IMG/VR virus record: IMGVR_UViG_3300031787_007614
Location: 124,001-188,000 of that record
Strand: one strand, 5' to 3'
Length of the DNA stretch: 64,000 nucleotides
A model generated the notes under the pieces. That model was given only the letters and a program-made list of their open reading frames with translations, was not told where the DNA came from and searched no databases. Positions 225 through 31,147 of the stretch are shown here, piece by piece. The position numbers and the translations under genes are program-made. The stretch's first letter is position 1; each line of letters starts with the position of its first letter.

Positions 225-253
225 ATTATAGCAGTTTGGGCATTATTGGTCAA
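225..253 (-). promoter_or_regulatory. sigma70-type promoter TTGACC-17-TATAAT
   Basis: -35 at 253-248, -10 at 230-225. Confidence 0.85.
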
Positions 254-5835: not shown

Positions 5836-5864
5836 ATTATAGCAGATTGGCTTTTATTGGTCAA
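5836..5864 (-). promoter_or_regulatory. sigma70-type promoter TTGACC-17-TATAAT
   Basis: The -35 contains the TGA stop of the upstream gene; ATG 6 nt after the -10. Confidence 0.85.
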
Positions 5865-23634: not shown

Positions 23635-23858
23635 CAGTACAGTTTTTTAGGTAGTGCTTGCTCGGCTAGTTGTTTGCGCCAGCGATTTTTGGCAGCACTG
23701 CGTTTGAGTTTGCGAGCAGTAGTGGGCTTGATGTAGTGCTCTTTTTCACGGAGATCATTGAGTATGTTTGACGCTTGAATTTTTTTCTTGAGTTTTCTCA
23801 GCGCACGTTCAATATTGTTGTCCTGAACCAACACTGATCTACCATGTAATTTACCCAT
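23634..23858 (-). CDS. rpsU: Ribosomal protein bS21
   Basis: IERALRKLKKK, LREKEHYIKPTTARKLKR, C-terminal LY as in E. coli S21. Confidence 0.9.
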   Translation of the reverse strand: MGKLHGRSVLVQDNNIERALRKLKKKIQASNILNDLREKEHYIKPTTARKLKRSAAKNRWRKQLAEQALPKKLY

Positions 23859-25056
23859 TGACTTTCTTTAACTCCTCGGGAGTATTTACCATGTTTTCGT
23901 CAATTTCTACATGGGCGATGTTTTGTTTAGTATACTCGCCTAGCTTGTACATGTGTGGCAGTAGCACACGTTCCAGTTCACTGTGTAGTCCACGAGCACC
24001 AGTTTTGTTCTTGATGGTATTGTCGGCAATTTTGACCAGGGCCTCTGGGGTAAAATCCAACACAATCTTGTCTTGGTCAAACAGCCATTTGTACTGTTCT
24101 ATATAACTGTGTTTGATATCAATCAATATCCTAATGAGATCATCTCTAGTTAAATCTTGCAATGCTACCCAGGTTGGGAAACGACCAACAAATTCTGGAA
24201 TCATACCAAAGCGAATCAAATCGTCAGGTGTGACTTGGTCTAGGTGCGTGGTGGTATCCGAGTTTACTTTGGCACCAAACCCTATGCTGGTTCCACGCAC
24301 TCGACTTTTTACAATGTTATCCAGGCCCACAAATGCGCCGCCTGCAATGAACAGGATATTGGTGGTGTCAATTTCAACTGTTTCACCTGATGGATGTTTG
24401 CGCCCACCTTGTGGAACAATTCTACACTTGGTTCCTTCGACTAGCTTGAGCAGAGCCTGTTGTACACCTTCACCTGATACATCTCTTGTGATGGATGCTG
24501 ATTCCGAACGACGAGAAATTTTATCAACTTCATCTAAAAACACAATGCCACGTTGGCATCGATCAACGTCATTACCAGCAGCCGCAAACAGTCTACTAAT
24601 CAAACTTTCCACATCATCGCCAACATAGCCTGCTTCAGTAAGACTGGTGGCGTCAGCAATCACAAACGGCACGTCAAGATATCGTGCTACCGATCTTGCC
24701 AACAGAGTTTTTCCCGAACCAGTGGGCCCAAGCATGAGAATGTTGACTTTTTCAATTTCGGTATGTTTGTCATGATTGTTGATGCGTTTGTAATGATTGG
24801 CAATTGCCACGCTCAACACAATCTTGGCTTGATCCTGACCAATTACGTATTGATCAAGATGTGTTTTGATCTCAATTGGATTCAATGTAGGGGATGTTTT
24901 TGTTTCTTTAACTATTAGTTCTTCTTTGAGAAGAGTTTCACATAAATCCACACATTCATTGCAAATTGCAACACCTTCGCCCACAATTAGTTTGGCCACT
25001 GCGTCTTTATGTTTGTTACAAAAACTGCAGGTGTCAATGGTTTCAGTCTGTTTCAT
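23851..25056 (-). CDS. clpX: Clp protease ATPase subunit
   Basis: Zn finger CSFC..CNEC, GPTGSGKT, GYVG, LDEVDK, RDVSGEGVQ, IGF loop. Confidence 0.97.
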   Translation of the reverse strand: MKQTETIDTCSFCNKHKDAVAKLIVGEGVAICNECVDLCETLLKEELIVKETKTSPTLNPIEIKTHLDQYVIGQDQAKIVLSVAIANHYKRINNHDKHTEIEKVNILMLGPTGSGKTLLARSVARYLDVPFVIADATSLTEAGYVGDDVESLISRLFAAAGNDVDRCQRGIVFLDEVDKISRRSESASITRDVSGEGVQQALLKLVEGTKCRIVPQGGRKHPSGETVEIDTTNILFIAGGAFVGLDNIVKSRVRGTSIGFGAKVNSDTTTHLDQVTPDDLIRFGMIPEFVGRFPTWVALQDLTRDDLIRILIDIKHSYIEQYKWLFDQDKIVLDFTPEALVKIADNTIKNKTGARGLHSELERVLLPHMYKLGEYTKQNIAHVEIDENMVNTPEELKKVNG

Positions 25057-26558
25057 AAGTTATTGGTTTGTTTAAGACGTTCTGCAACTTGTTCACGTTC
25101 AATGTCACTCAACAAGTCCGGATCATACTCACCGGTTGCAATTTTGTCAATGAGGTGATCAATGTATGCTGTATCGTAAGTATAGTTATCTGTAGAATTT
25201 TTGTCAATAATAATCCACTCGTTGCCATTGAATTTGTAAACCTTGCTGGGCAATTGATCTACTCTAACAAAAGTATCGCCTTTTGAAGGACTGTCAGGGA
25301 ATCGTATTCCAAAGCTGGAGTTTGATTGTCTAGGTTGGTCATTGTCAGGCACCAACTTCATCCAAGGTAATTCGTCAATTTCTCCACGATATAATTTACG
25401 TCTTTCTTCCTTGAGTGTTCGATCAGGGTTTGCAGTTTTCCATGCTTTGACTGCTGCCTTGACATTTGCAGGCTCATCTTCTTCTTGATCAAAGTTAGGC
25501 ATGTCCACAAACACTGGCGAGCTTGGTGTTTCAGGTTGTGTAAAACTAATCGTGGCACCAGAAGTAGAGTCAAACACATCGCACTGTTTGTTTGGACAGA
25601 AAAGACCTATACCAGGAGCATCTACTAGTTCCGTGCCACACTTGTAGCAATTGATTGGGTCTGGCTTGTCAAACATCCACCCCGGCGGATGTGGATCTTT
25701 CGGCAATTCCACACTGGCTTGTATTTGTTCTATTTGGTCATCGGTGAGTGGCCCATCGTCGGGCTCATATTTAGGTTCGTCATGTATGAATCCACCTGTG
25801 CCTTGCCGTGCCCATTCAAACTGTTTGTTGGCGGCTAGGATAAGTGTGAGAGCAAGAGGATCAAACACCAGCACAATCATTATGATCATCCAACGCACTG
25901 CCCGTTCCAACAGATTGGCATCAGGATTGTCTCCGTACAACAGGGCCGCAATGTATTTTATCGGTCCGACTTCTGCGTCAACTTTGCGTACTTCGGCGGC
26001 AATAGGCGCACGGGCATCATTAAGTTCTGCGATAGACTTTTGCGACTGTGATATTTCAGCTTGAAGGCGAGTACGCTCTTTCTGCTGGGCTCTTCGCATA
26101 GCCACAGCTTTTTCGGCACCCGTTTCTGTTGTTGAGCGGCCCAGTACTTGGTCCACTCCCTCATCCATCTGTTTAAGTGCCTTACGGTTTGCTTCAATAT
26201 TCTCTTTTTCGGTCTTGATCTTTTCATCATATATTGCAATCTTGCTAACAACGTCGCCGGACACAAGATTTTGATCAGAGTGTGCCTTTGACAAATAACC
26301 AAAGATACCCATACTGGTCAGTATCATTAGGAATGCTATGGCTGGTACCAGGTACAGTTTGAACACAATACCGGCACGTTTCCAGTTGTTGTGCAACCAC
26401 ACAGTGGCCACAATCTTGCCCAGTTCTAGTGAACCACCCATGATGATCACAGGCACCACAGCCGCTGAAAATATAGCAGTAAGGCCGGCCACTGAGTACC
26501 AGGCAGCCACGGCGCTTAGGAGTAATGCGGTGGCGAGAATTCCAAATCCAAATATCAT
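25053..26558 (-). CDS. Multi-pass membrane coiled-coil protein
   Basis: N-terminal TMs, long coiled coil, further TM, acidic/Pro region with CYKC..CPNKQC. Confidence 0.75.
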   Translation of the reverse strand: MIFGFGILATALLLSAVAAWYSVAGLTAIFSAAVVPVIIMGGSLELGKIVATVWLHNNWKRAGIVFKLYLVPAIAFLMILTSMGIFGYLSKAHSDQNLVSGDVVSKIAIYDEKIKTEKENIEANRKALKQMDEGVDQVLGRSTTETGAEKAVAMRRAQQKERTRLQAEISQSQKSIAELNDARAPIAAEVRKVDAEVGPIKYIAALLYGDNPDANLLERAVRWMIIMIVLVFDPLALTLILAANKQFEWARQGTGGFIHDEPKYEPDDGPLTDDQIEQIQASVELPKDPHPPGWMFDKPDPINCYKCGTELVDAPGIGLFCPNKQCDVFDSTSGATISFTQPETPSSPVFVDMPNFDQEEDEPANVKAAVKAWKTANPDRTLKEERRKLYRGEIDELPWMKLVPDNDQPRQSNSSFGIRFPDSPSKGDTFVRVDQLPSKVYKFNGNEWIIIDKNSTDNYTYDTAYIDHLIDKIATGEYDPDLLSDIEREQVAERLKQTNNL

Positions 26559-26563
26559 AAAAA

Positions 26564-26887
26564 TTATTTACCGGGTAGCGGCAAAGAGATCACCGCATGC
26601 TTTACTGCCACCCATGTAGCAAAGGTCTGATCTGGCACTTCAAACCATACAGGCACTGTTTGAGCGGGACTTAGCCCCCAGAGATTATTGTGCTCTAGTC
26701 TGCGTTTTACCCGGCTTTGAGTGCGCCAGTTTTTACCAAACATAACACGAGCCTCGTTCATAACTGCATACCATTCTTTAGTAGAATGCAATTGGAACCA
26801 AATACGGTGCATGACCAAAGGCGTTATTTCAAGCGAGTCAAGTGACTCAGGGATACTCAACGCAGAGCCCTCAATTTTGACAGTCAT
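26564..26887 (-). CDS. Hypothetical protein
   Basis: ORF with GAAAGG SD. Confidence 0.7.
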   Translation of the reverse strand: MTVKIEGSALSIPESLDSLEITPLVMHRIWFQLHSTKEWYAVMNEARVMFGKNWRTQSRVKRRLEHNNLWGLSPAQTVPVWFEVPDQTFATWVAVKHAVISLPLPGK

Positions 26888-26899
26888 TTCTAACCTTTC

Positions 26900-27068
26900 C
26901 AGATTTATCCTCTCGGCATACTCCCAGGGTACCAGCCCAGGTTTTGATCTTACAATCGAGGTCCTTGTCGCAACCTACAGGATTTACGTCCACTTGCCAC
27001 GGTCTGAGCAGGCCTAGGTTATCGATTCACCCCGCCCTACCATTAGACTACCCAATCTCTTTGATCAT
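26900..27068 (-). ncRNA. Candidate structured non-coding RNA or long leader
   Basis: No ORF longer than about 10 codons from the ATGs; follows a consensus promoter; several stems with GNRA-type loops. Confidence 0.4.
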
Positions 27069-27069
27069 G

Positions 27070-27105
27070 CACAGTAATTATAACTGTGTATGTTGAGATT
27101 GTCAA
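27070..27105 (-). promoter_or_regulatory. Perfect sigma70 promoter TTGACA-17-TATAAT, with the -10 flanked by CACAGT/ACTGTG inverted repeat
   Basis: -35 at 27105-27100 (contains the upstream TGA), -10 at 27082-27077; inverted repeat at 27070-27088. Confidence 0.9.
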
Positions 27106-27563
27106 GTGTTTTGTTTTTGTTTGACAAGATTGCACACAGTTTGAAACTGCTCGTATGCATCACGCACAGCCGGATGACTCATCAGTTTGTCTGCTTCGGC
27201 AATCATGGCGTTGACACCTGCTTCGGCATGATCTCGAGCACTGCCCATGGTCAGTGCGGCCAGACCATCACCAAACTCTTTTGCCAATTTTTCCCAGGCT
27301 TTCTTTTGTCCAGGAGTAATAGGTGTACGCTGTGGCCGCATCTCGCTAGATTTTCTAAGAGCATCACAGATGGCATCTTCCGCTACACGGCCTGCGGCAA
27401 TCATCGGAGCATAAGCGGGATCAATATTATAGTAGCGAGACCTGCCTCCGGGGTATACTGACACCAGGTGATTGCCTTTTGTAAAGCTATCCAAAAAGTC
27501 GCTGTCGTATTCTGTCACAGGCACATACCGACGTCCAATTTTTTCATAGTAAATTTTCTTCAT
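27102..27563 (-). CDS. Hypothetical protein
   Basis: ORF track; coupled operon. Confidence 0.8.
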   Translation of the reverse strand: MKKIYYEKIGRRYVPVTEYDSDFLDSFTKGNHLVSVYPGGRSRYYNIDPAYAPMIAAGRVAEDAICDALRKSSEMRPQRTPITPGQKKAWEKLAKEFGDGLAALTMGSARDHAEAGVNAMIAEADKLMSHPAVRDAYEQFQTVCNLVKQKQNT

Positions 27564-27790: not shown

Positions 27791-28215
27791 TAGCGATACT
27801 CCCGATCTAGTTTAACACTGGTCAATCCAGCAACCATTTGAAATTTGTCCCAGGCATCTTTCACTGCCGGGCGAGATTCAAGTTCACTGTCCGGCAATAC
27901 TGTTTCCAACCAGTATTCTGATCGGCGGCTTGGATGTGTGCCAAACTTGCGTGGCTGGTGTAGTCGACCAGTTTCCCAAAGTTCAATGCTAACACTGCGG
28001 AACTTGTCTTCATCTTCTTTACTGTTGAAATCATAGGCACTCCATTCTGCTCGGCTGCCGCCACCATAGCAGTATCCCGCCCAGATGCCTGCCCACTGTT
28101 CGTCATCTCTGGGATCAAAATCTGTACGAGTAATCAGCACCAACACATCGTCCATGTTCACACTACCTTCCACAATGTCTCGAACGCAACGGCTGTAACT
28201 GAGTCCAATTTTCAT
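27790..28215 (-). CDS. Hypothetical protein
   Basis: ORF track; coupled operon. Confidence 0.8.
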   Translation of the reverse strand: MKIGLSYSRCVRDIVEGSVNMDDVLVLITRTDFDPRDDEQWAGIWAGYCYGGGSRAEWSAYDFNSKEDEDKFRSVSIELWETGRLHQPRKFGTHPSRRSEYWLETVLPDSELESRPAVKDAWDKFQMVAGLTSVKLDREYR

Positions 28216-29585
28216 ACTTTTTCACCTGCTTCAAAGTCACGGAATCTCAAGAACCGGGGGAATCGGAGACTGTATGTTCCGTCTTGGTTTTGGGTGACTG
28301 CGTCCGCTTGGACTTCAACCAAGTGACCAAGTAGCTGATCCCTACTGGCCCAATACTCATCGCGAAGAGTATCACTAAACCCACTACCAACATTAACATG
28401 AATTCTACGGTCATTATCATCTCCTTCACAGATTATAGCACCCAACCGGTTTTCGTTCCTACCAGTTCCTTCTTCAAAACCCACAATGTTCAAATCAACT
28501 GTGATGGTGGGTTTCCATTTCATCCACGAGTCCGAACGTTTGCATTGGTATGGTGCGTCCAGGCTCTTGATCATGATGCCTTCAAAGCCACCTTCCACAG
28601 CAGCTTCCGCATAACGTTGCATGATGTCATGTCCTTCGGCTGTGTCCAGGTTCACATCCAAGCCTGGCATGATGCGCAGACACGTAGTCTCTTCCAATCC
28701 AGCGCGGGCTGACTCTAGCCATTCCAGACGTTTGTACTGCCCTGCATTCCAGTGCCCTTCTTGAAAAGCTTCAAGTGGGATGATATCAAAGATGTGATAC
28801 ACCATGCCGGTGGTTTCGGCGTTTGATTTGCGATGTGCTTGGCGCATGAGTTGCTGGAAACTTTCGCCCACAATCTCACCATCCAACACATAATGGCCAC
28901 CGGTACCACGTCCATATTGGAAGTGCTTGCGAGCATCTTCAATGGCATCGGCAACCTGCGGAAAGTTTTCAAATTCTTTGCCATTGCGACTGTATAGTGT
29001 GACTGTGGATCCACTAACCACTGCCAACACACGCACACCATCCAGTTTGCATTCCAGGCGCTTGATGCCTTTCATTTTCTTGGGATGATCTGTTGAGTCT
29101 TGTGCCAGCTGGCACGAGAAAATTGGTATCTTGTATTCGGTCTTGCCCACAACCTTGTTGATGGTCTTTTCTGAAATGCCGCATCGAAGGTCTTTGATCA
29201 ACACACGGCGGGCTAACATGTTCCATTCTTCCGAGTCAAACTGCTGGCTCATTTGTTCAACTGCTTCTCTAGCACGATTGCCTGTGATGTACCTAGTGCG
29301 TAGAGCTTCTAGCATGGCCCAGAACTGTGTCCAAGGATTGGCACGACCAGTCAGTCCCTCAGTCTCAGGCACCTGGCGGATGCCAAACACATAGAACGGA
29401 TTGTAGGCTTGGTAGCAATTGAACAAAAAACACTGTGCATCGGCACTGCCAAGCCGAGCAGCCATGAGAGCCTTTTCAATCACTTTTTCTTTGTGAATGC
29501 GACTGTCAGAGCTTTCTAGGTCTCGGATCCATCCTGCGGCCATTATGGCATCAAACCTTGAGTAGCTGTAATCGGTTTCATTCAT
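28212..29585 (-). CDS. lig: ATP-dependent DNA ligase
   Basis: KLDGVR (motif I), VLDGEI, FDII, EGIMIK, WMKWK, OB fold SLRFPRF. Confidence 0.95.
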   Translation of the reverse strand: MNETDYSYSRFDAIMAAGWIRDLESSDSRIHKEKVIEKALMAARLGSADAQCFLFNCYQAYNPFYVFGIRQVPETEGLTGRANPWTQFWAMLEALRTRYITGNRAREAVEQMSQQFDSEEWNMLARRVLIKDLRCGISEKTINKVVGKTEYKIPIFSCQLAQDSTDHPKKMKGIKRLECKLDGVRVLAVVSGSTVTLYSRNGKEFENFPQVADAIEDARKHFQYGRGTGGHYVLDGEIVGESFQQLMRQAHRKSNAETTGMVYHIFDIIPLEAFQEGHWNAGQYKRLEWLESARAGLEETTCLRIMPGLDVNLDTAEGHDIMQRYAEAAVEGGFEGIMIKSLDAPYQCKRSDSWMKWKPTITVDLNIVGFEEGTGRNENRLGAIICEGDDNDRRIHVNVGSGFSDTLRDEYWASRDQLLGHLVEVQADAVTQNQDGTYSLRFPRFLRFRDFEAGEKV

Positions 29586-30570: not shown

Positions 30571-30625
30571 GCTCCTTTGTTGCTTACTATGCCTAAATTA
30601 TAACAGATTGGGAATTATTGGTCAA
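30571..30625 (-). promoter_or_regulatory. Promoter TTGACC-17-TATAAT plus leader cassette copy 1
   Basis: -35 at 30625-30620 contains the upstream TGA; 30571-30602 is identical to 30944-30975. Confidence 0.85.
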
Positions 30626-31118: not shown

Positions 31119-31147
31119 ATTATAGCAGTTTGGGCATTATTTGTCAA
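31119..31147 (-). promoter_or_regulatory. Perfect sigma70 promoter TTGACA-17-TATAAT
   Basis: -35 at 31147-31142, -10 at 31124-31119; ATG 6 nt later. Confidence 0.9.

What the first reader, a model, noticed from the sequence alone, without database searches (positions are those of the whole stretch)
26890..27105. Roughly 170-nt non-coding transcript behind a perfect promoter: candidate new structured RNA
Seen: the longest ORF-poor gap in this part of the window follows TTGACA-17-TATAAT, whose -10 is flanked by CACAGT/ACTGTG. It holds only tiny ORFs (MIKEIG; a 9-codon one). It can form a closing helix GGGTA (27053-27049) with TACCC (26931-26927), plus GTAGG/CCTGC, AGGT/ACCT and stems capped by GTAA/GCAA loops. 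I recognise no known family. Inference: riboswitch-like leader, ribozyme or sRNA.
Basis: partly seen in the sequence, partly recalled or inferred. Interest (0 to 1): 0.62.

Follow-up and report, generated by a model that had tools for sequence, protein, structure and literature searches.

The report
New structured leader RNA in jumbo phages
The gap holds a real, previously unclassified, about 177-base folded RNA that giant freshwater phages always place in front of one small unknown gene; it probably controls that gene and may pair up with itself.

Summary
The window is part of a complete 364-kb phage genome. On the minus strand a perfect sigma-70 promoter (27105-27077) drives an RNA that starts near 27070 and runs to the ribosome-binding site (26898-26894) of a 107-aa gene.

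I found 87 distinct versions of this leader in uncultured phage contigs. Each one sits directly upstream of the same gene family, and each of the 6 large records searched in full carries a single copy. Protein identity among these loci falls to about 51%. The promoter spacer drifts, yet the leader keeps ten helices:
- 87% of cells are paired.
- 33 of 48 pairs show compensatory double changes.
- The covariation score is 0.38, against at most 0.09 in the slid controls.

No reading frame is conserved. Rfam 15 and ARAGORN give no match. Contigs from RNA libraries of four studies lie on the leader and none goes past 27059.

It is a long irregular hairpin plus a three-way junction whose closing helix abuts the Shine-Dalgarno sequence. 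It also has a GNRA hairpin and an apical loop with self-complementary hexamers that switch between palindromes in different lineages, which is a signature of homodimer contacts.

The function is inferred only. Most likely it is a cis-acting translational control element bound by the operon's own protein. A riboswitch or a self-assembling RNA/RNP remains open.

The parts
27077..27105 (-). Sigma-70 consensus promoter: -35 TTGACA at 27105-27100, 17-nt spacer, -10 TATAAT at 27082-27077.
   Evidence: One search gives 12/12 matches. 66 of 83 distinct relatives also have 12/12 and 80 of 83 have at least 10/12. The -10 ends 6 nt (61 cases) or 8 nt (21 cases) before GCAUG. The spacer sequence is not conserved.
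27066..27070 (-). Predicted 5' end of the RNA and the invariant GCAUG. This is candidate P1, 5' strand, which would pair with UAUGC at 26920-26916 and form a pseudoknot relative to P7/P8.
   Evidence: The position 7 nt after the -10 is an inference. 99% of cells can pair but no pair shows a double change, so the pairing is unproven. RNA-library contigs reach 27059 and none goes further upstream.
27057..27063 (-). Conserved purine-rich single strand CAAAGAG (CAAGGAG in most relatives).
   Evidence: Alignments. No partner was found.
26978..27054 (-). Domain I, a long irregular hairpin:
- P2: 27054-27051 with 26981-26978.
- P3: 27048-27044 with 26992-26988.
- P4: 27043-27040 with 27002-26999.
- P5: 27039-27031 with 27012-27004.
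- Conserved bulge GGCAAG: 26998-26993.
- Linker GUAAAU: 26987-26982.
   Evidence: One search shows double changes in P2 (3 of 4 pairs), P3 (5 of 5), P4 (1 of 4) and P5 (6 of 6). The P5 extension pair G27032-C27011 is G-C in 72 sequences and A-U in 14. One relative (L125) lacks P4-P5 but keeps the rest.
27013..27030 (-). Apical loop of domain I with two self-complementary hexamers: AUCGAU (27026-27021) and CCUAGG (27018-27013). An alternative register, GGGU 27032-27029 with ACCU 27019-16, would give a 9-nt loop GA-AUCGAU-A.
   Evidence: 71 of 73 distinct variants carry a Watson-Crick palindrome of at least 6 nt here, against 31 +/- 4 (maximum 44) in shuffles. Eight different hexamers occur at site 1 and five at site 2, some extended to 8-10 nt. 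The two registers are compared.
26968..26977 (-). Conserved linker UAGGUUGCGA between the two domains.
   Evidence: Nearly invariant in 87 sequences.
26958..26967 (-). 5' strands of P7 (CAAGGA, 26967-26962) and P8 (CCUC, 26961-26958).
   Evidence: P7 is CACUGU/ACAGUG or CACUGA/UCAGUG in distant relatives. P8 appears as UCCAA/UUGGA, UCUCUG/CAGAGA or CUA/UAG. One search shows double changes in 3 of 6 P7 pairs and 4 of 4 P8 pairs.
26946..26957 (-). Hairpin H3: GAUU-GUAA-GAUC.
   Evidence: The stem has 3-6 bp of variable sequence. The loop is GNRA in 28 of 39 distinct variants.
26923..26945 (-). Conserved junction AAAA (26945-26942; CAAAAC together with the C on either side) and hairpin H4 (26941-26936 with 26928-26923), which has a conserved 7-nt loop CUGGUAC (26935-26929) that resembles a T-loop.
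   Evidence: H4 has double changes in 6 of 6 pairs and 97% of cells paired. The T-loop reading is an inference from the sequence U-G-R-U-A.
26899..26921 (-). 3' part of domain II: conserved GUAUGC (26921-26916, the candidate P1 3' strand), the P8 3' strand GAGG (26912-26909), a bulge AUAA (26908-26905), and the P7 3' strand AUCUGG (26904-26899).
26885..26898 (-). Shine-Dalgarno AAAGG (26898-26894), which starts one base after P7, and the start codon AUG (26887-26885) of the 107-aa gene.
   Evidence: GAAAGG is conserved in nearly all relatives.
26564..26887 (-). The 107-aa gene that always follows the leader. It is followed 5 nt later by a 501-aa gene (25053-26558).
   Evidence: There are 189 homologs, none with a name or Pfam domain. 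Every leader found is followed by a homolog. The AF2 model has pLDDT 78.6 and a ferredoxin-like beta-alpha-beta fold, with only generic fold matches of Z<=6.9.

Best explanation
This is a new family of ornate 5'-leader RNA, about 177 nt from roughly 27070 to 26894 on the minus strand. It belongs to an operon of giant freshwater phages.

Shown:
- It lies behind a host-type consensus promoter.
- It is non-coding.
- It folds into two covarying domains. Domain I is a long hairpin, P2-P5, with a palindrome-bearing apical loop. Domain II is a three-way junction of P7/P8, a GNRA hairpin and a hairpin with a conserved loop.
- The closing helix P7 ends one base before the Shine-Dalgarno sequence.
- It occurs once per genome, always in front of the same 107-aa gene.

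Inferred:
- It acts in cis on translation initiation of that gene and of the closely following 501-aa gene.
- The folded P7/P8 stack, locked by the invariant GCAUG/GUAUGC pseudoknot, holds a bulky structure against the ribosome-binding site.
- An effector shifts the balance between the open and closed states. The exclusive one-RNA-one-gene linkage points to the basic 107-aa product itself, as in autogenous control of ribosomal-protein mRNAs and of T4 gene 32.
- The palindrome-switching apical loop suggests that the RNA works as a symmetric dimer.
For: Structure:
- The covariance model scores 187.8 bits (E 4.6e-43) in the window.
- Over 87 distinct homologs, 87.2% of cells are paired against 72.4% in shuffles. 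33 of 48 pairs show double changes, in 625 cells. The covariation score is 0.380 against 0.144 in shuffles (0 of 500 reach it) and at most 0.090 with partners slid (the 59-sequence set gave the same picture).

Non-coding:
- The frame upstream of the AUG stays open for anything from 0 to 59 codons in different relatives.
- In most relatives every frame of the leader carries stops.
- Leader lengths differ by amounts that are not multiples of three.

Promoter: 66 of 83 distinct relatives have 12/12 matches at a fixed distance from the leader.

Linkage:
- Every leader is followed by the same gene.
- There is one copy in each of 6 records of 149-364 kb.

Transcription: contigs from RNA libraries of 4 studies cover 26780-27059. 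One 229-nt contig is 100% identical over 26831-27059. None crosses 27059 towards the promoter.

P7 next to the Shine-Dalgarno sequence.

Dimer signature. The same logic was validated by cryo-EM for the OLE and GOLLD loops in PMC12286853.

The protein has a conserved basic patch (KNWRxQxHVKRRLE) and a ferredoxin-like fold.
Against: - No experiment or computation here shows that the protein binds RNA. The fold matches are generic (Z<=6.9).
- The Shine-Dalgarno sequence itself is not paired in any conserved helix, and I found no conserved anti-SD or alternative 'off' structure. The regulatory step is therefore inferred from proximity only.
- P1 has no covariation.
- Known autoregulatory operators are usually simpler than this RNA. 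So many invariant junction nucleotides are more typical of riboswitch aptamers, ribozymes or RNP RNAs.
- The RNA-library evidence comes from assembled contigs. It cannot give strand, ends or levels, and it is biased toward the most conserved stretch.
- All homologs come from one clade of related phages with conserved gene order. The exclusive gene linkage could therefore partly reflect shared descent.
Confidence: 0.45

Rival explanations
1. It is a metabolite- or ion-sensing riboswitch. The two-domain fold would be an aptamer, and ligand binding would stabilise the P1/P7/P8 pseudoknot next to the Shine-Dalgarno sequence and change translation of the operon.
For: - It sits in a 5' leader directly behind the promoter.
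- It has about ten helices and many invariant unpaired nucleotides in junctions: CCGUGGCA, AGGUUGMGACA, CAAAAC, CUGRUAC and GUAUGC.
- It has a GNRA hairpin.
- A helix ends at the ribosome-binding site, as in translational riboswitches.
- Its size is in the range of large aptamers.
Against: - It is associated with a single gene family of unknown function in all 87 variants, which gives no metabolic clue.
- I found no conserved alternative pairing that would act as an expression platform, and no terminator.
- It matches no known riboswitch model.
- Palindromic loops are not a usual aptamer feature.
Confidence: 0.2
2. It is a functional non-coding RNA in its own right that self-assembles, or forms an RNP with the products of the downstream genes. 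The palindromic loop contacts would give a dimer or a higher oligomer. It would act in trans and merely be co-transcribed with those genes, as OLE RNA is with oapA.
For: - Two homologous loop sites keep self-complementarity while their sequence switches among 8 and 5 different hexamers. This is the signature used for symmetric kissing loops of OLE and GOLLD (PMC12286853).
- Phage-borne RNAs under 200 nt, such as manA, form cages (bioRxiv 10.64898/2026.07.01.735769).
- The promoter is a consensus one, and RNA-library contigs concentrate on the leader.
- It carries GNRA and T-loop-like modules typical of compact folds.
Against: - There is no terminator or conserved processing site between the RNA and the ORF.
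- RNA-library contigs run 56-107 nt into the ORF, so the species seen are mRNA 5' parts rather than a discrete small RNA.
- The structure is tied to the ribosome-binding site.
- Six-nucleotide palindromes are common by chance (31 of 73 in shuffles), so the argument rests on position and switching.
Confidence: 0.25
3. It is a self-cleaving ribozyme or a processing signal that frees the mRNA from its 5' part.
For: It is a complex conserved fold in a phage, which is a setting where small ribozymes are frequent. This rests on general knowledge and was not tested here.
Against: It matches no ribozyme family in Rfam 15, even at E<=10. RNA-library contigs are continuous across the leader into the ORF with no break point. 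At about 177 nt it is larger than most self-cleavers.
Confidence: 0.03
4. It is not an RNA element at all. Either it is a DNA-level control region whose palindromes are operators for a dimeric DNA-binding protein, or it is an N-terminal extension of the gene, as many automatic gene calls of about 158 aa assume.
For: The palindromes ATCGAT and CCTAGG could be protein-binding sites. Several database entries call the gene 51 codons longer.
Against: - Compensatory changes in 33 base pairs across 9 of the 10 helices are explained only by RNA pairing.
- The in-frame extension is closed by a stop right before the AUG in many relatives, and the frames shift with 1-2-nt indels.
- The palindromes have no common sequence.
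Confidence: 0.02

Closest known systems
Autogenous translational operators: the rpsO/S15 pseudoknot and other ribosomal-protein leaders, and the phage T4 gene 32 5' pseudoknot (from established knowledge)
   Same: A structured 5' leader tied to one particular gene. A pseudoknot or helix sits next to the ribosome-binding site. There are phage precedents.
   Different: This RNA is much larger and more ornate, with about ten helices and many invariant junction bases. The protein's RNA binding is unknown. There is no sequence or model similarity.
Large translational riboswitch aptamers such as the cobalamin and lysine classes (from established knowledge)
   Same: Similar size, multi-helix junctions, tetraloop and T-loop-type tertiary modules, and a closing helix or pseudoknot that reaches the ribosome-binding site.
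   Different: No Rfam model matches. It is linked to only one gene family, there is no ligand clue, and it carries palindromic apical loops.
Self-assembling ornate RNAs: OLE (dimer), ROOL and GOLLD (cages), and the manA motif (PMC12286853; bioRxiv 10.64898/2026.07.01.735769)
   Same: It is phage-borne or co-transcribed with partner genes. Its loops switch between different palindromes, which in OLE and GOLLD marks symmetric intermolecular kissing loops. manA is also a leader-type motif under 200 nt carried by phages.
   Different: There is no homology to any of them. It is far smaller than OLE, ROOL or GOLLD. Oligomerisation here is only inferred.
HIV-1 dimerisation initiation site (from established knowledge)
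   Same: In one of the two possible registers the window's loop is 9 nt: two purines, a 6-nt palindrome, then one purine (GA-AUCGAU-A).
   Different: The context is unrelated. The better-supported register gives an 18-nt loop with two palindromes.
Anonymous candidate structured RNAs of IMG/VR ('DNAVirus_X', Fremin et al. 2023, PMC10690425)
   Same: They come from the same data source and method class. That screen could have picked up part of this motif.
   Different: Those candidates are 29-151 nt long (mean 67), unnamed and uncharacterised. The supplementary files are not held, so overlap could not be checked.

Membership tests
Any Rfam 15 family (4227 models, including riboswitches, ribozymes, manA, GOLLD, ROOL, OLE and raiA) | A score at or above the family's gathering threshold | tested here: not met
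   There were 0 matches over the whole window at gathering level. On 26700-27300 at E<=10 only two noise hits appeared: sR7 at 15.4 bits against a threshold of 37, and rli43 at 12.2 against 100. The sR7 hit lies wholly outside the leader; the rli43 hit spans the promoter and only the leader's first 17 nt.
tRNA / tmRNA / tRNA-like | A cloverleaf detected by ARAGORN | tested here: not met
   0 genes in the window. The D-arm-like string at 27053-27036 belongs to the covarying helices P2-P5.
Riboswitch (as a kind) | A conserved structured aptamer supported by covariation | tested here: met
Riboswitch (as a kind) | Location in the 5' untranslated leader of the regulated gene | tested here: met
   The promoter and its distance are conserved. 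The structure ends at the Shine-Dalgarno sequence. RNA-library contigs lie on the leader. The transcription start itself is inferred.
Riboswitch (as a kind) | An expression platform with mutually exclusive structures (terminator/antiterminator, or SD sequestration) | tested here: inconclusive
   There is no terminator in the leader, and the Shine-Dalgarno sequence is not in a conserved helix. Only proximity of P7, and two alternative registers of the G-run in domain I, were seen.
Riboswitch (as a kind) | Direct binding of a small ligand | not testable with these tools
   This needs in-line probing, ITC or a similar assay.
Autogenous protein-binding leader | Exclusive association with the gene of the presumed regulator | tested here: met
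   All 87 distinct leaders precede homologs of the 107-aa gene. There is a single copy per genome record.
Autogenous protein-binding leader | The encoded protein binds the leader and represses its own translation | not testable with these tools
   Only indirect hints exist: a conserved basic patch and a ferredoxin-like fold.
Symmetric kissing-loop (homodimer) element | An exposed loop with a self-complementary core kept through palindrome-to-palindrome changes | tested here: met
   71 of 73 distinct variants carry one, against 31 +/- 4 in shuffles. Eight different hexamers occur at site 1 and five at site 2. The criterion is the one used in PMC12286853.
Symmetric kissing-loop (homodimer) element | Dimer formation in solution | not testable with these tools
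   This needs native gels, SEC-MALS or cryo-EM.
Self-cleaving ribozyme | A match to a known class, or a cleavage site seen in RNA data | tested here: not met
   Searches give no match. RNA-library contigs run unbroken through the leader, though contigs are weak evidence.

The most novel reading that the evidence does not exclude
The leader is a new class of small (under 200 nt) self-assembling phage RNA. Its apical loop carries two independent self-complementary sites, which could join copies into dimers or, because there are two interfaces, into rings, cages or filaments. The 107-aa protein and the membrane-anchored 501-aa protein encoded just downstream might take part. Control of its own mRNA would then be secondary.
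Probability: 0.2. Interest if true: 0.8.

Novelty: new variant of a known kind. Interest (0 to 1): 0.66.

Why it matters
Large, richly conserved RNA folds are rare, and past ones have turned out to be riboswitches, ribozymes or, recently, self-assembling RNA particles.

This RNA has several features that make it worth testing:
- Its comparative support is unusually clean: 87 variants and 33 compensating pairs.
- It is found only in uncultured giant freshwater phages.
- It sits behind a consensus promoter.
- It appears in RNA libraries from environmental samples.
- It carries the palindrome-switching loop signature of RNA-RNA dimer contacts.

It gives a concrete, short, testable RNA of about 177 nt, plus a 107-aa partner candidate, for studying how giant phages control early genes or build RNA-based assemblies.

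It also corrects a systematic annotation error: many databases extend the gene by about 51 codons into the RNA.

Tried and rejected
- Single-sequence folding gives no thermodynamic signal (z = 0.09).
- RNAalifold on close kin gave a poor model that contradicts the covarying hairpins. I replaced it with a hand model tested on a covariance-model alignment.
- blastn and tblastn against 50,697 cultured-phage records found nothing for the locus or for the protein.
- Pfam and PHROGs found nothing for the 107-aa protein or its neighbours of 153, 76 and 141 aa.
- Foldseek against PDB and BFVD, VIA-align and the Atlas feature search gave only generic ferredoxin-like matches or unnamed viral clusters.
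None of the 120 bacterial or archaeal loci it fetched matches the model. This is not evidence that the motif is absent from cellular genomes.
- A mutual-information search for extra tertiary pairs gave only clade-level correlations. Candidates I looked at by eye were the 5' CAARGAG strand, GGCCY with AGGUU, and GCAA with UUGC.
- uORF idea: the AUG inside GCAUG is invariant, but the following codons vary at positions 1-2 while position 3 is conserved, and the stop positions differ. It is therefore not a conserved peptide.
- The supplementary tables of the IMG/VR structured-RNA catalogue are not held, so I could not check overlap.
- Relatives cannot be drawn for a virus record.
- No protein-complex job was sent, because no protein-protein claim is made.

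Full report
**Context**

The window is bases 124001-188000 of a complete 364,404-bp virus record with direct terminal repeats, so this is a jumbo phage. Near-identical DNA occurs in freshwater and lake metagenomes from many studies. No cultured phage in a collection of 50,697 records resembles the locus or its protein.

Around the finding all genes lie on the minus strand:
- an ATP-dependent DNA ligase at 28212-29585 (Pfam and PHROG);
- three small unknown genes;
- the gap 26888-27101;
- a 107-aa gene at 26564-26887;
- 5 nt further on, a 501-aa gene at 25053-26558.

**The observation**

The promoter TTGACA-17-TATAAT at 27105-27077 on the minus strand is a 12/12 match. It is one of 14 near-consensus promoters in the window, all on the minus strand, where 0.65 are expected by chance. 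The phage evidently uses host sigma-70 promoters widely.

Folding the single sequence gives no signal (z = 0.09). Rfam 15 gives nothing at gathering level and only noise at E<=10. ARAGORN finds no tRNA.

**Relatives**

The 107-aa protein has 189 homologs in the large protein collection. None is named and none has a Pfam domain. Loci fetched from IMG/VR with the protein and with an alignment of its distant homologs all carry a conserved stretch of about 185 nt between a consensus promoter and the start codon.

I built a covariance model from 49 leaders (model R1). Its results were:
- 187.8 bits in the window, and no second copy there.
- One copy in the whole 364-kb genome.
- One copy in each of five other records of 149-349 kb.
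- Exactly one hit in every locus that carries the gene.

DNA-pattern scans brought in further instances. Every one is again followed by a homolog of the same gene. In all there are 87 distinct leader sequences. Protein identity to the window falls to about 51%.

None of the 120 bacterial or archaeal loci fetched by my over-loose pattern matches the model.

**Not coding**

In frame with the AUG, the upstream sequence stays open for 29 codons in the window, 0 in many relatives and up to 59 in others. In most relatives every frame of the leader carries stops. Leader lengths differ by amounts that are not multiples of three. The many database gene calls of about 158 aa are therefore over-extensions into the RNA.

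The invariant AUG inside GCAUG does not head a conserved peptide. The two bases after it vary freely while the third is fixed, and the stop positions differ.

**The fold**

Positions are window coordinates on the minus strand.

Domain I is one long irregular hairpin:
- P2: 27054-27051 with 26981-26978.
- P3: 27048-27044 with 26992-26988.
- P4: 27043-27040 with 27002-26999.
- P5: 27039-27031 with 27012-27004.
- A conserved 3'-side bulge GGCAAG, part of the near-invariant CCGUGGCA.
- A conserved GUAAAU linker opposite a 2-nt loop.
- An 18-nt apical loop.

A conserved linker (UAGGUUGCGA) leads to domain II, a three-way junction:
- It is closed by the stacked helices P7 (26967-26962 with 26904-26899) and P8 (26961-26958 with 26912-26909).
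- Hairpin H3 is GAUU-GUAA-GAUC.
- The junction CAAAAC follows.
- Hairpin H4 has the conserved loop CUGGUAC.
- Then comes the conserved strand GUAUGC.

The invariant 5' GCAUG (27070-27066) can pair with UAUGC (26920-26916). That pairing, P1, would be a pseudoknot relative to P7/P8.

On the 87-sequence alignment:
- 87.2% of cells are standard pairs, against 72.4% in shuffles and 36-39% with partners slid.
- 33 of 48 pairs show changes on both sides, in 625 cells.
- The covariation score is 0.380, against 0.144 in shuffles (0 of 500 reach it) and at most 0.090 slid.

Examples of covariation:
- P3: GUCUA/UGGAC against GUUCA/UGAAC.
- P5: AAAAGC/GCUUUU against CGCUGU/GCGGCG.
- P7: CAAGG/UCUGG against CACUGU/ACAGUG against CACUGA/UCAGUG.
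- P8: CCUC/GAGG against UCCAA/UUGGA against UCUCUG/CAGAGA.
- H4: CCUGGG/CCUGGG against CCCAGG/CCUGGG against ACUCGGG/CCCUGAGU.

P1 alone has no covariation. It is almost invariant, with four mismatched sequences, so it is plausible but unproven.

H3 is badly aligned by the model because its length varies. Taken sequence by sequence it is a 3-6-bp hairpin, capped by GNRA in 28 of 39 distinct variants.

One relative (L125) lacks P4-P5 yet keeps everything else. This marks that arm as an accessory extension.

**The apical loop**

Between the P4 strands, 71 of 73 distinct variants contain a Watson-Crick self-complementary word of at least 6 nt. Composition-matched shuffles give 31 +/- 4 with a maximum of 44. 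The 3' remainder of the leader is at chance level.

The words sit at two homologous sites and differ between lineages:
- Site 1: AUCGAU (window 27026-21), AGAUCU, UAGCUA, UUCGAA, GAAUUC, CAAUUG, UUUAAA and AUUAAU. Some are extended to 8-10 nt, such as AAAGAUCUUU and AAGCUAGCUU.
- Site 2: CCUAGG (window 27018-13), CCCGGG, ACCGGU, UCCGGA and CUCGAG.

A contiguous hexamer palindrome cannot pair within one strand. Switching from one palindrome to another is the pattern that Kretsch et al. used, and confirmed by cryo-EM, for symmetric intermolecular kissing loops in OLE and GOLLD (PMC12286853). I therefore infer that the RNA self-associates.

Caveats:
- Hexamer palindromes are common by chance.
- The sequences are related to one another.
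- A G-run (27033-27030) can pair with either of two CCY tracts.

The register that extends P5 has the compensatory change (G-C in 72 sequences, A-U in 14, 86 of 87 paired). The other register gives a 9-nt loop laid out like the HIV-1 DIS loop but fails in one clade.

**Transcription**

66 of 83 distinct upstream regions have a perfect 12/12 promoter and 80 have at least 10/12. The -10 ends 6 or 8 nt before GCAUG, while the spacer sequence is free to vary. The RNA therefore probably begins at or just before GCAUG.

Six metatranscriptome runs from five studies hold 14-19% of the sampled words of the 1301-nt stretch searched. Laid on the window, contigs from RNA libraries of four studies cover 26780-27059. 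One is a 229-nt contig identical over 26831-27059. None extends past 27059 towards the promoter.

This agrees with the predicted start and shows that the leader is continuous with the 5' part of the ORF. These are assembled contigs, so they cannot give strand, ends or abundance. The search also favours the most conserved stretch.

**The protein**

AlphaFold2 with 42 homologs gives a ferredoxin-like beta-alpha-beta fold (pLDDT 78.6) with a disordered N-terminus. The best structural matches are generic: V-ATPase subunit-a N-terminal domains and ACT or HMA-like domains, with Z<=6.9 and Foldseek E>=0.01. The Atlas finds only unnamed viral clusters. A conserved basic patch (KNWRxQxHVKRRLE) is compatible with nucleic-acid binding but proves nothing.

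**Mechanism**

Shown:
- a conserved, non-coding, multi-helix RNA lies at the 5' end of this operon's transcript;
- its last helix ends one base before the Shine-Dalgarno sequence.

Inferred: it acts in cis on translation initiation. The strict one-RNA-one-gene linkage points to the gene's own product as effector, as in ribosomal-protein leaders or T4 gene 32 (established knowledge). I put this at about 0.45.

A small-molecule riboswitch (0.2) is favoured by the RNA's complexity. It is weakened by the single unknown gene association and the lack of a visible expression platform.

A self-assembling RNA or RNP acting beyond its own mRNA (0.25) is favoured by the palindromic loops and by recent findings that phage-borne RNAs, including the manA motif of under 200 nt, form oligomers. 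It is weakened by the absence of a terminator or processing site.

A ribozyme (0.03), or a DNA-level or coding explanation (0.02), is unlikely.

**Novelty**

No Rfam family matches. An automated screen of IMG/VR reported 8,495 anonymous candidates of 29-151 nt (PMC10690425). Part of this motif may be among them, but the lists are not held here.

To my knowledge the RNA has no name, no described full architecture and no proposed function. It is a new class within the known kind of ornate structured leader RNAs.

Noticed in passing
window 225-253, 515-543, 5836-5864, 30597-30625, 31119-31147 (minus strand): Five of the 14 near-consensus sigma-70 promoters share not only the hexamers but also most of the spacer (CAATAAT.CCCAA..TGC). 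This looks like a repeated promoter cassette, perhaps with a built-in operator. All 14 promoters are on the minus strand.
   Followed up: no
window 26888-27040 and database entries P0003, P0009, P0017 and others: Many public gene calls for this family are about 158 aa instead of 106-107 aa, extended about 51 codons into the leader RNA. Stops and frameshifting indels in relatives show that the extension is an annotation artefact.
   Followed up: yes
L125:2312-2476 (300-kb contig): A minimal natural variant of the RNA lacks helices P4-P5. It keeps P2, P3, a short apical hairpin with a UUUAAA loop, GUGGC, and the whole of domain II (66 bits).
   Followed up: partly
window 25053-26558 (minus strand): The 501-aa gene starts 5 nt after the 107-aa gene. 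It has a hydrophobic N-terminus (MIFGFGILATALLL...), a long charged middle part, and a weak PHROG match to a virion structural protein (E 2e-4). The same N-terminus follows the small gene in many relatives, so the two genes probably form one operon under the leader.
   Followed up: partly
window 23851-25056 (minus strand): This 401-aa ORF has an N-terminal CxxC...CxxC motif and a Walker A motif (GPTGSGKT). By eye it looks like a ClpX-type ATPase. I did not run it against any family library.
   Followed up: no
window 27066-27094 (minus strand): The inverted repeat CACAGT/ACTGTG that brackets the -10 hexamer is present in the window and its closest kin, but the upstream arm is replaced by other sequence in relatives. 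It is probably not part of the conserved element.
   Followed up: yes
window 27010-27033 (minus strand): The G-run GGGG can pair with either of two CCY tracts that flank an RGG (GGGG...CCU-AGG-CCU). This gives two alternative registers of the apical part of domain I. I could not decide whether this is a functional switch or only slippage.
   Followed up: partly
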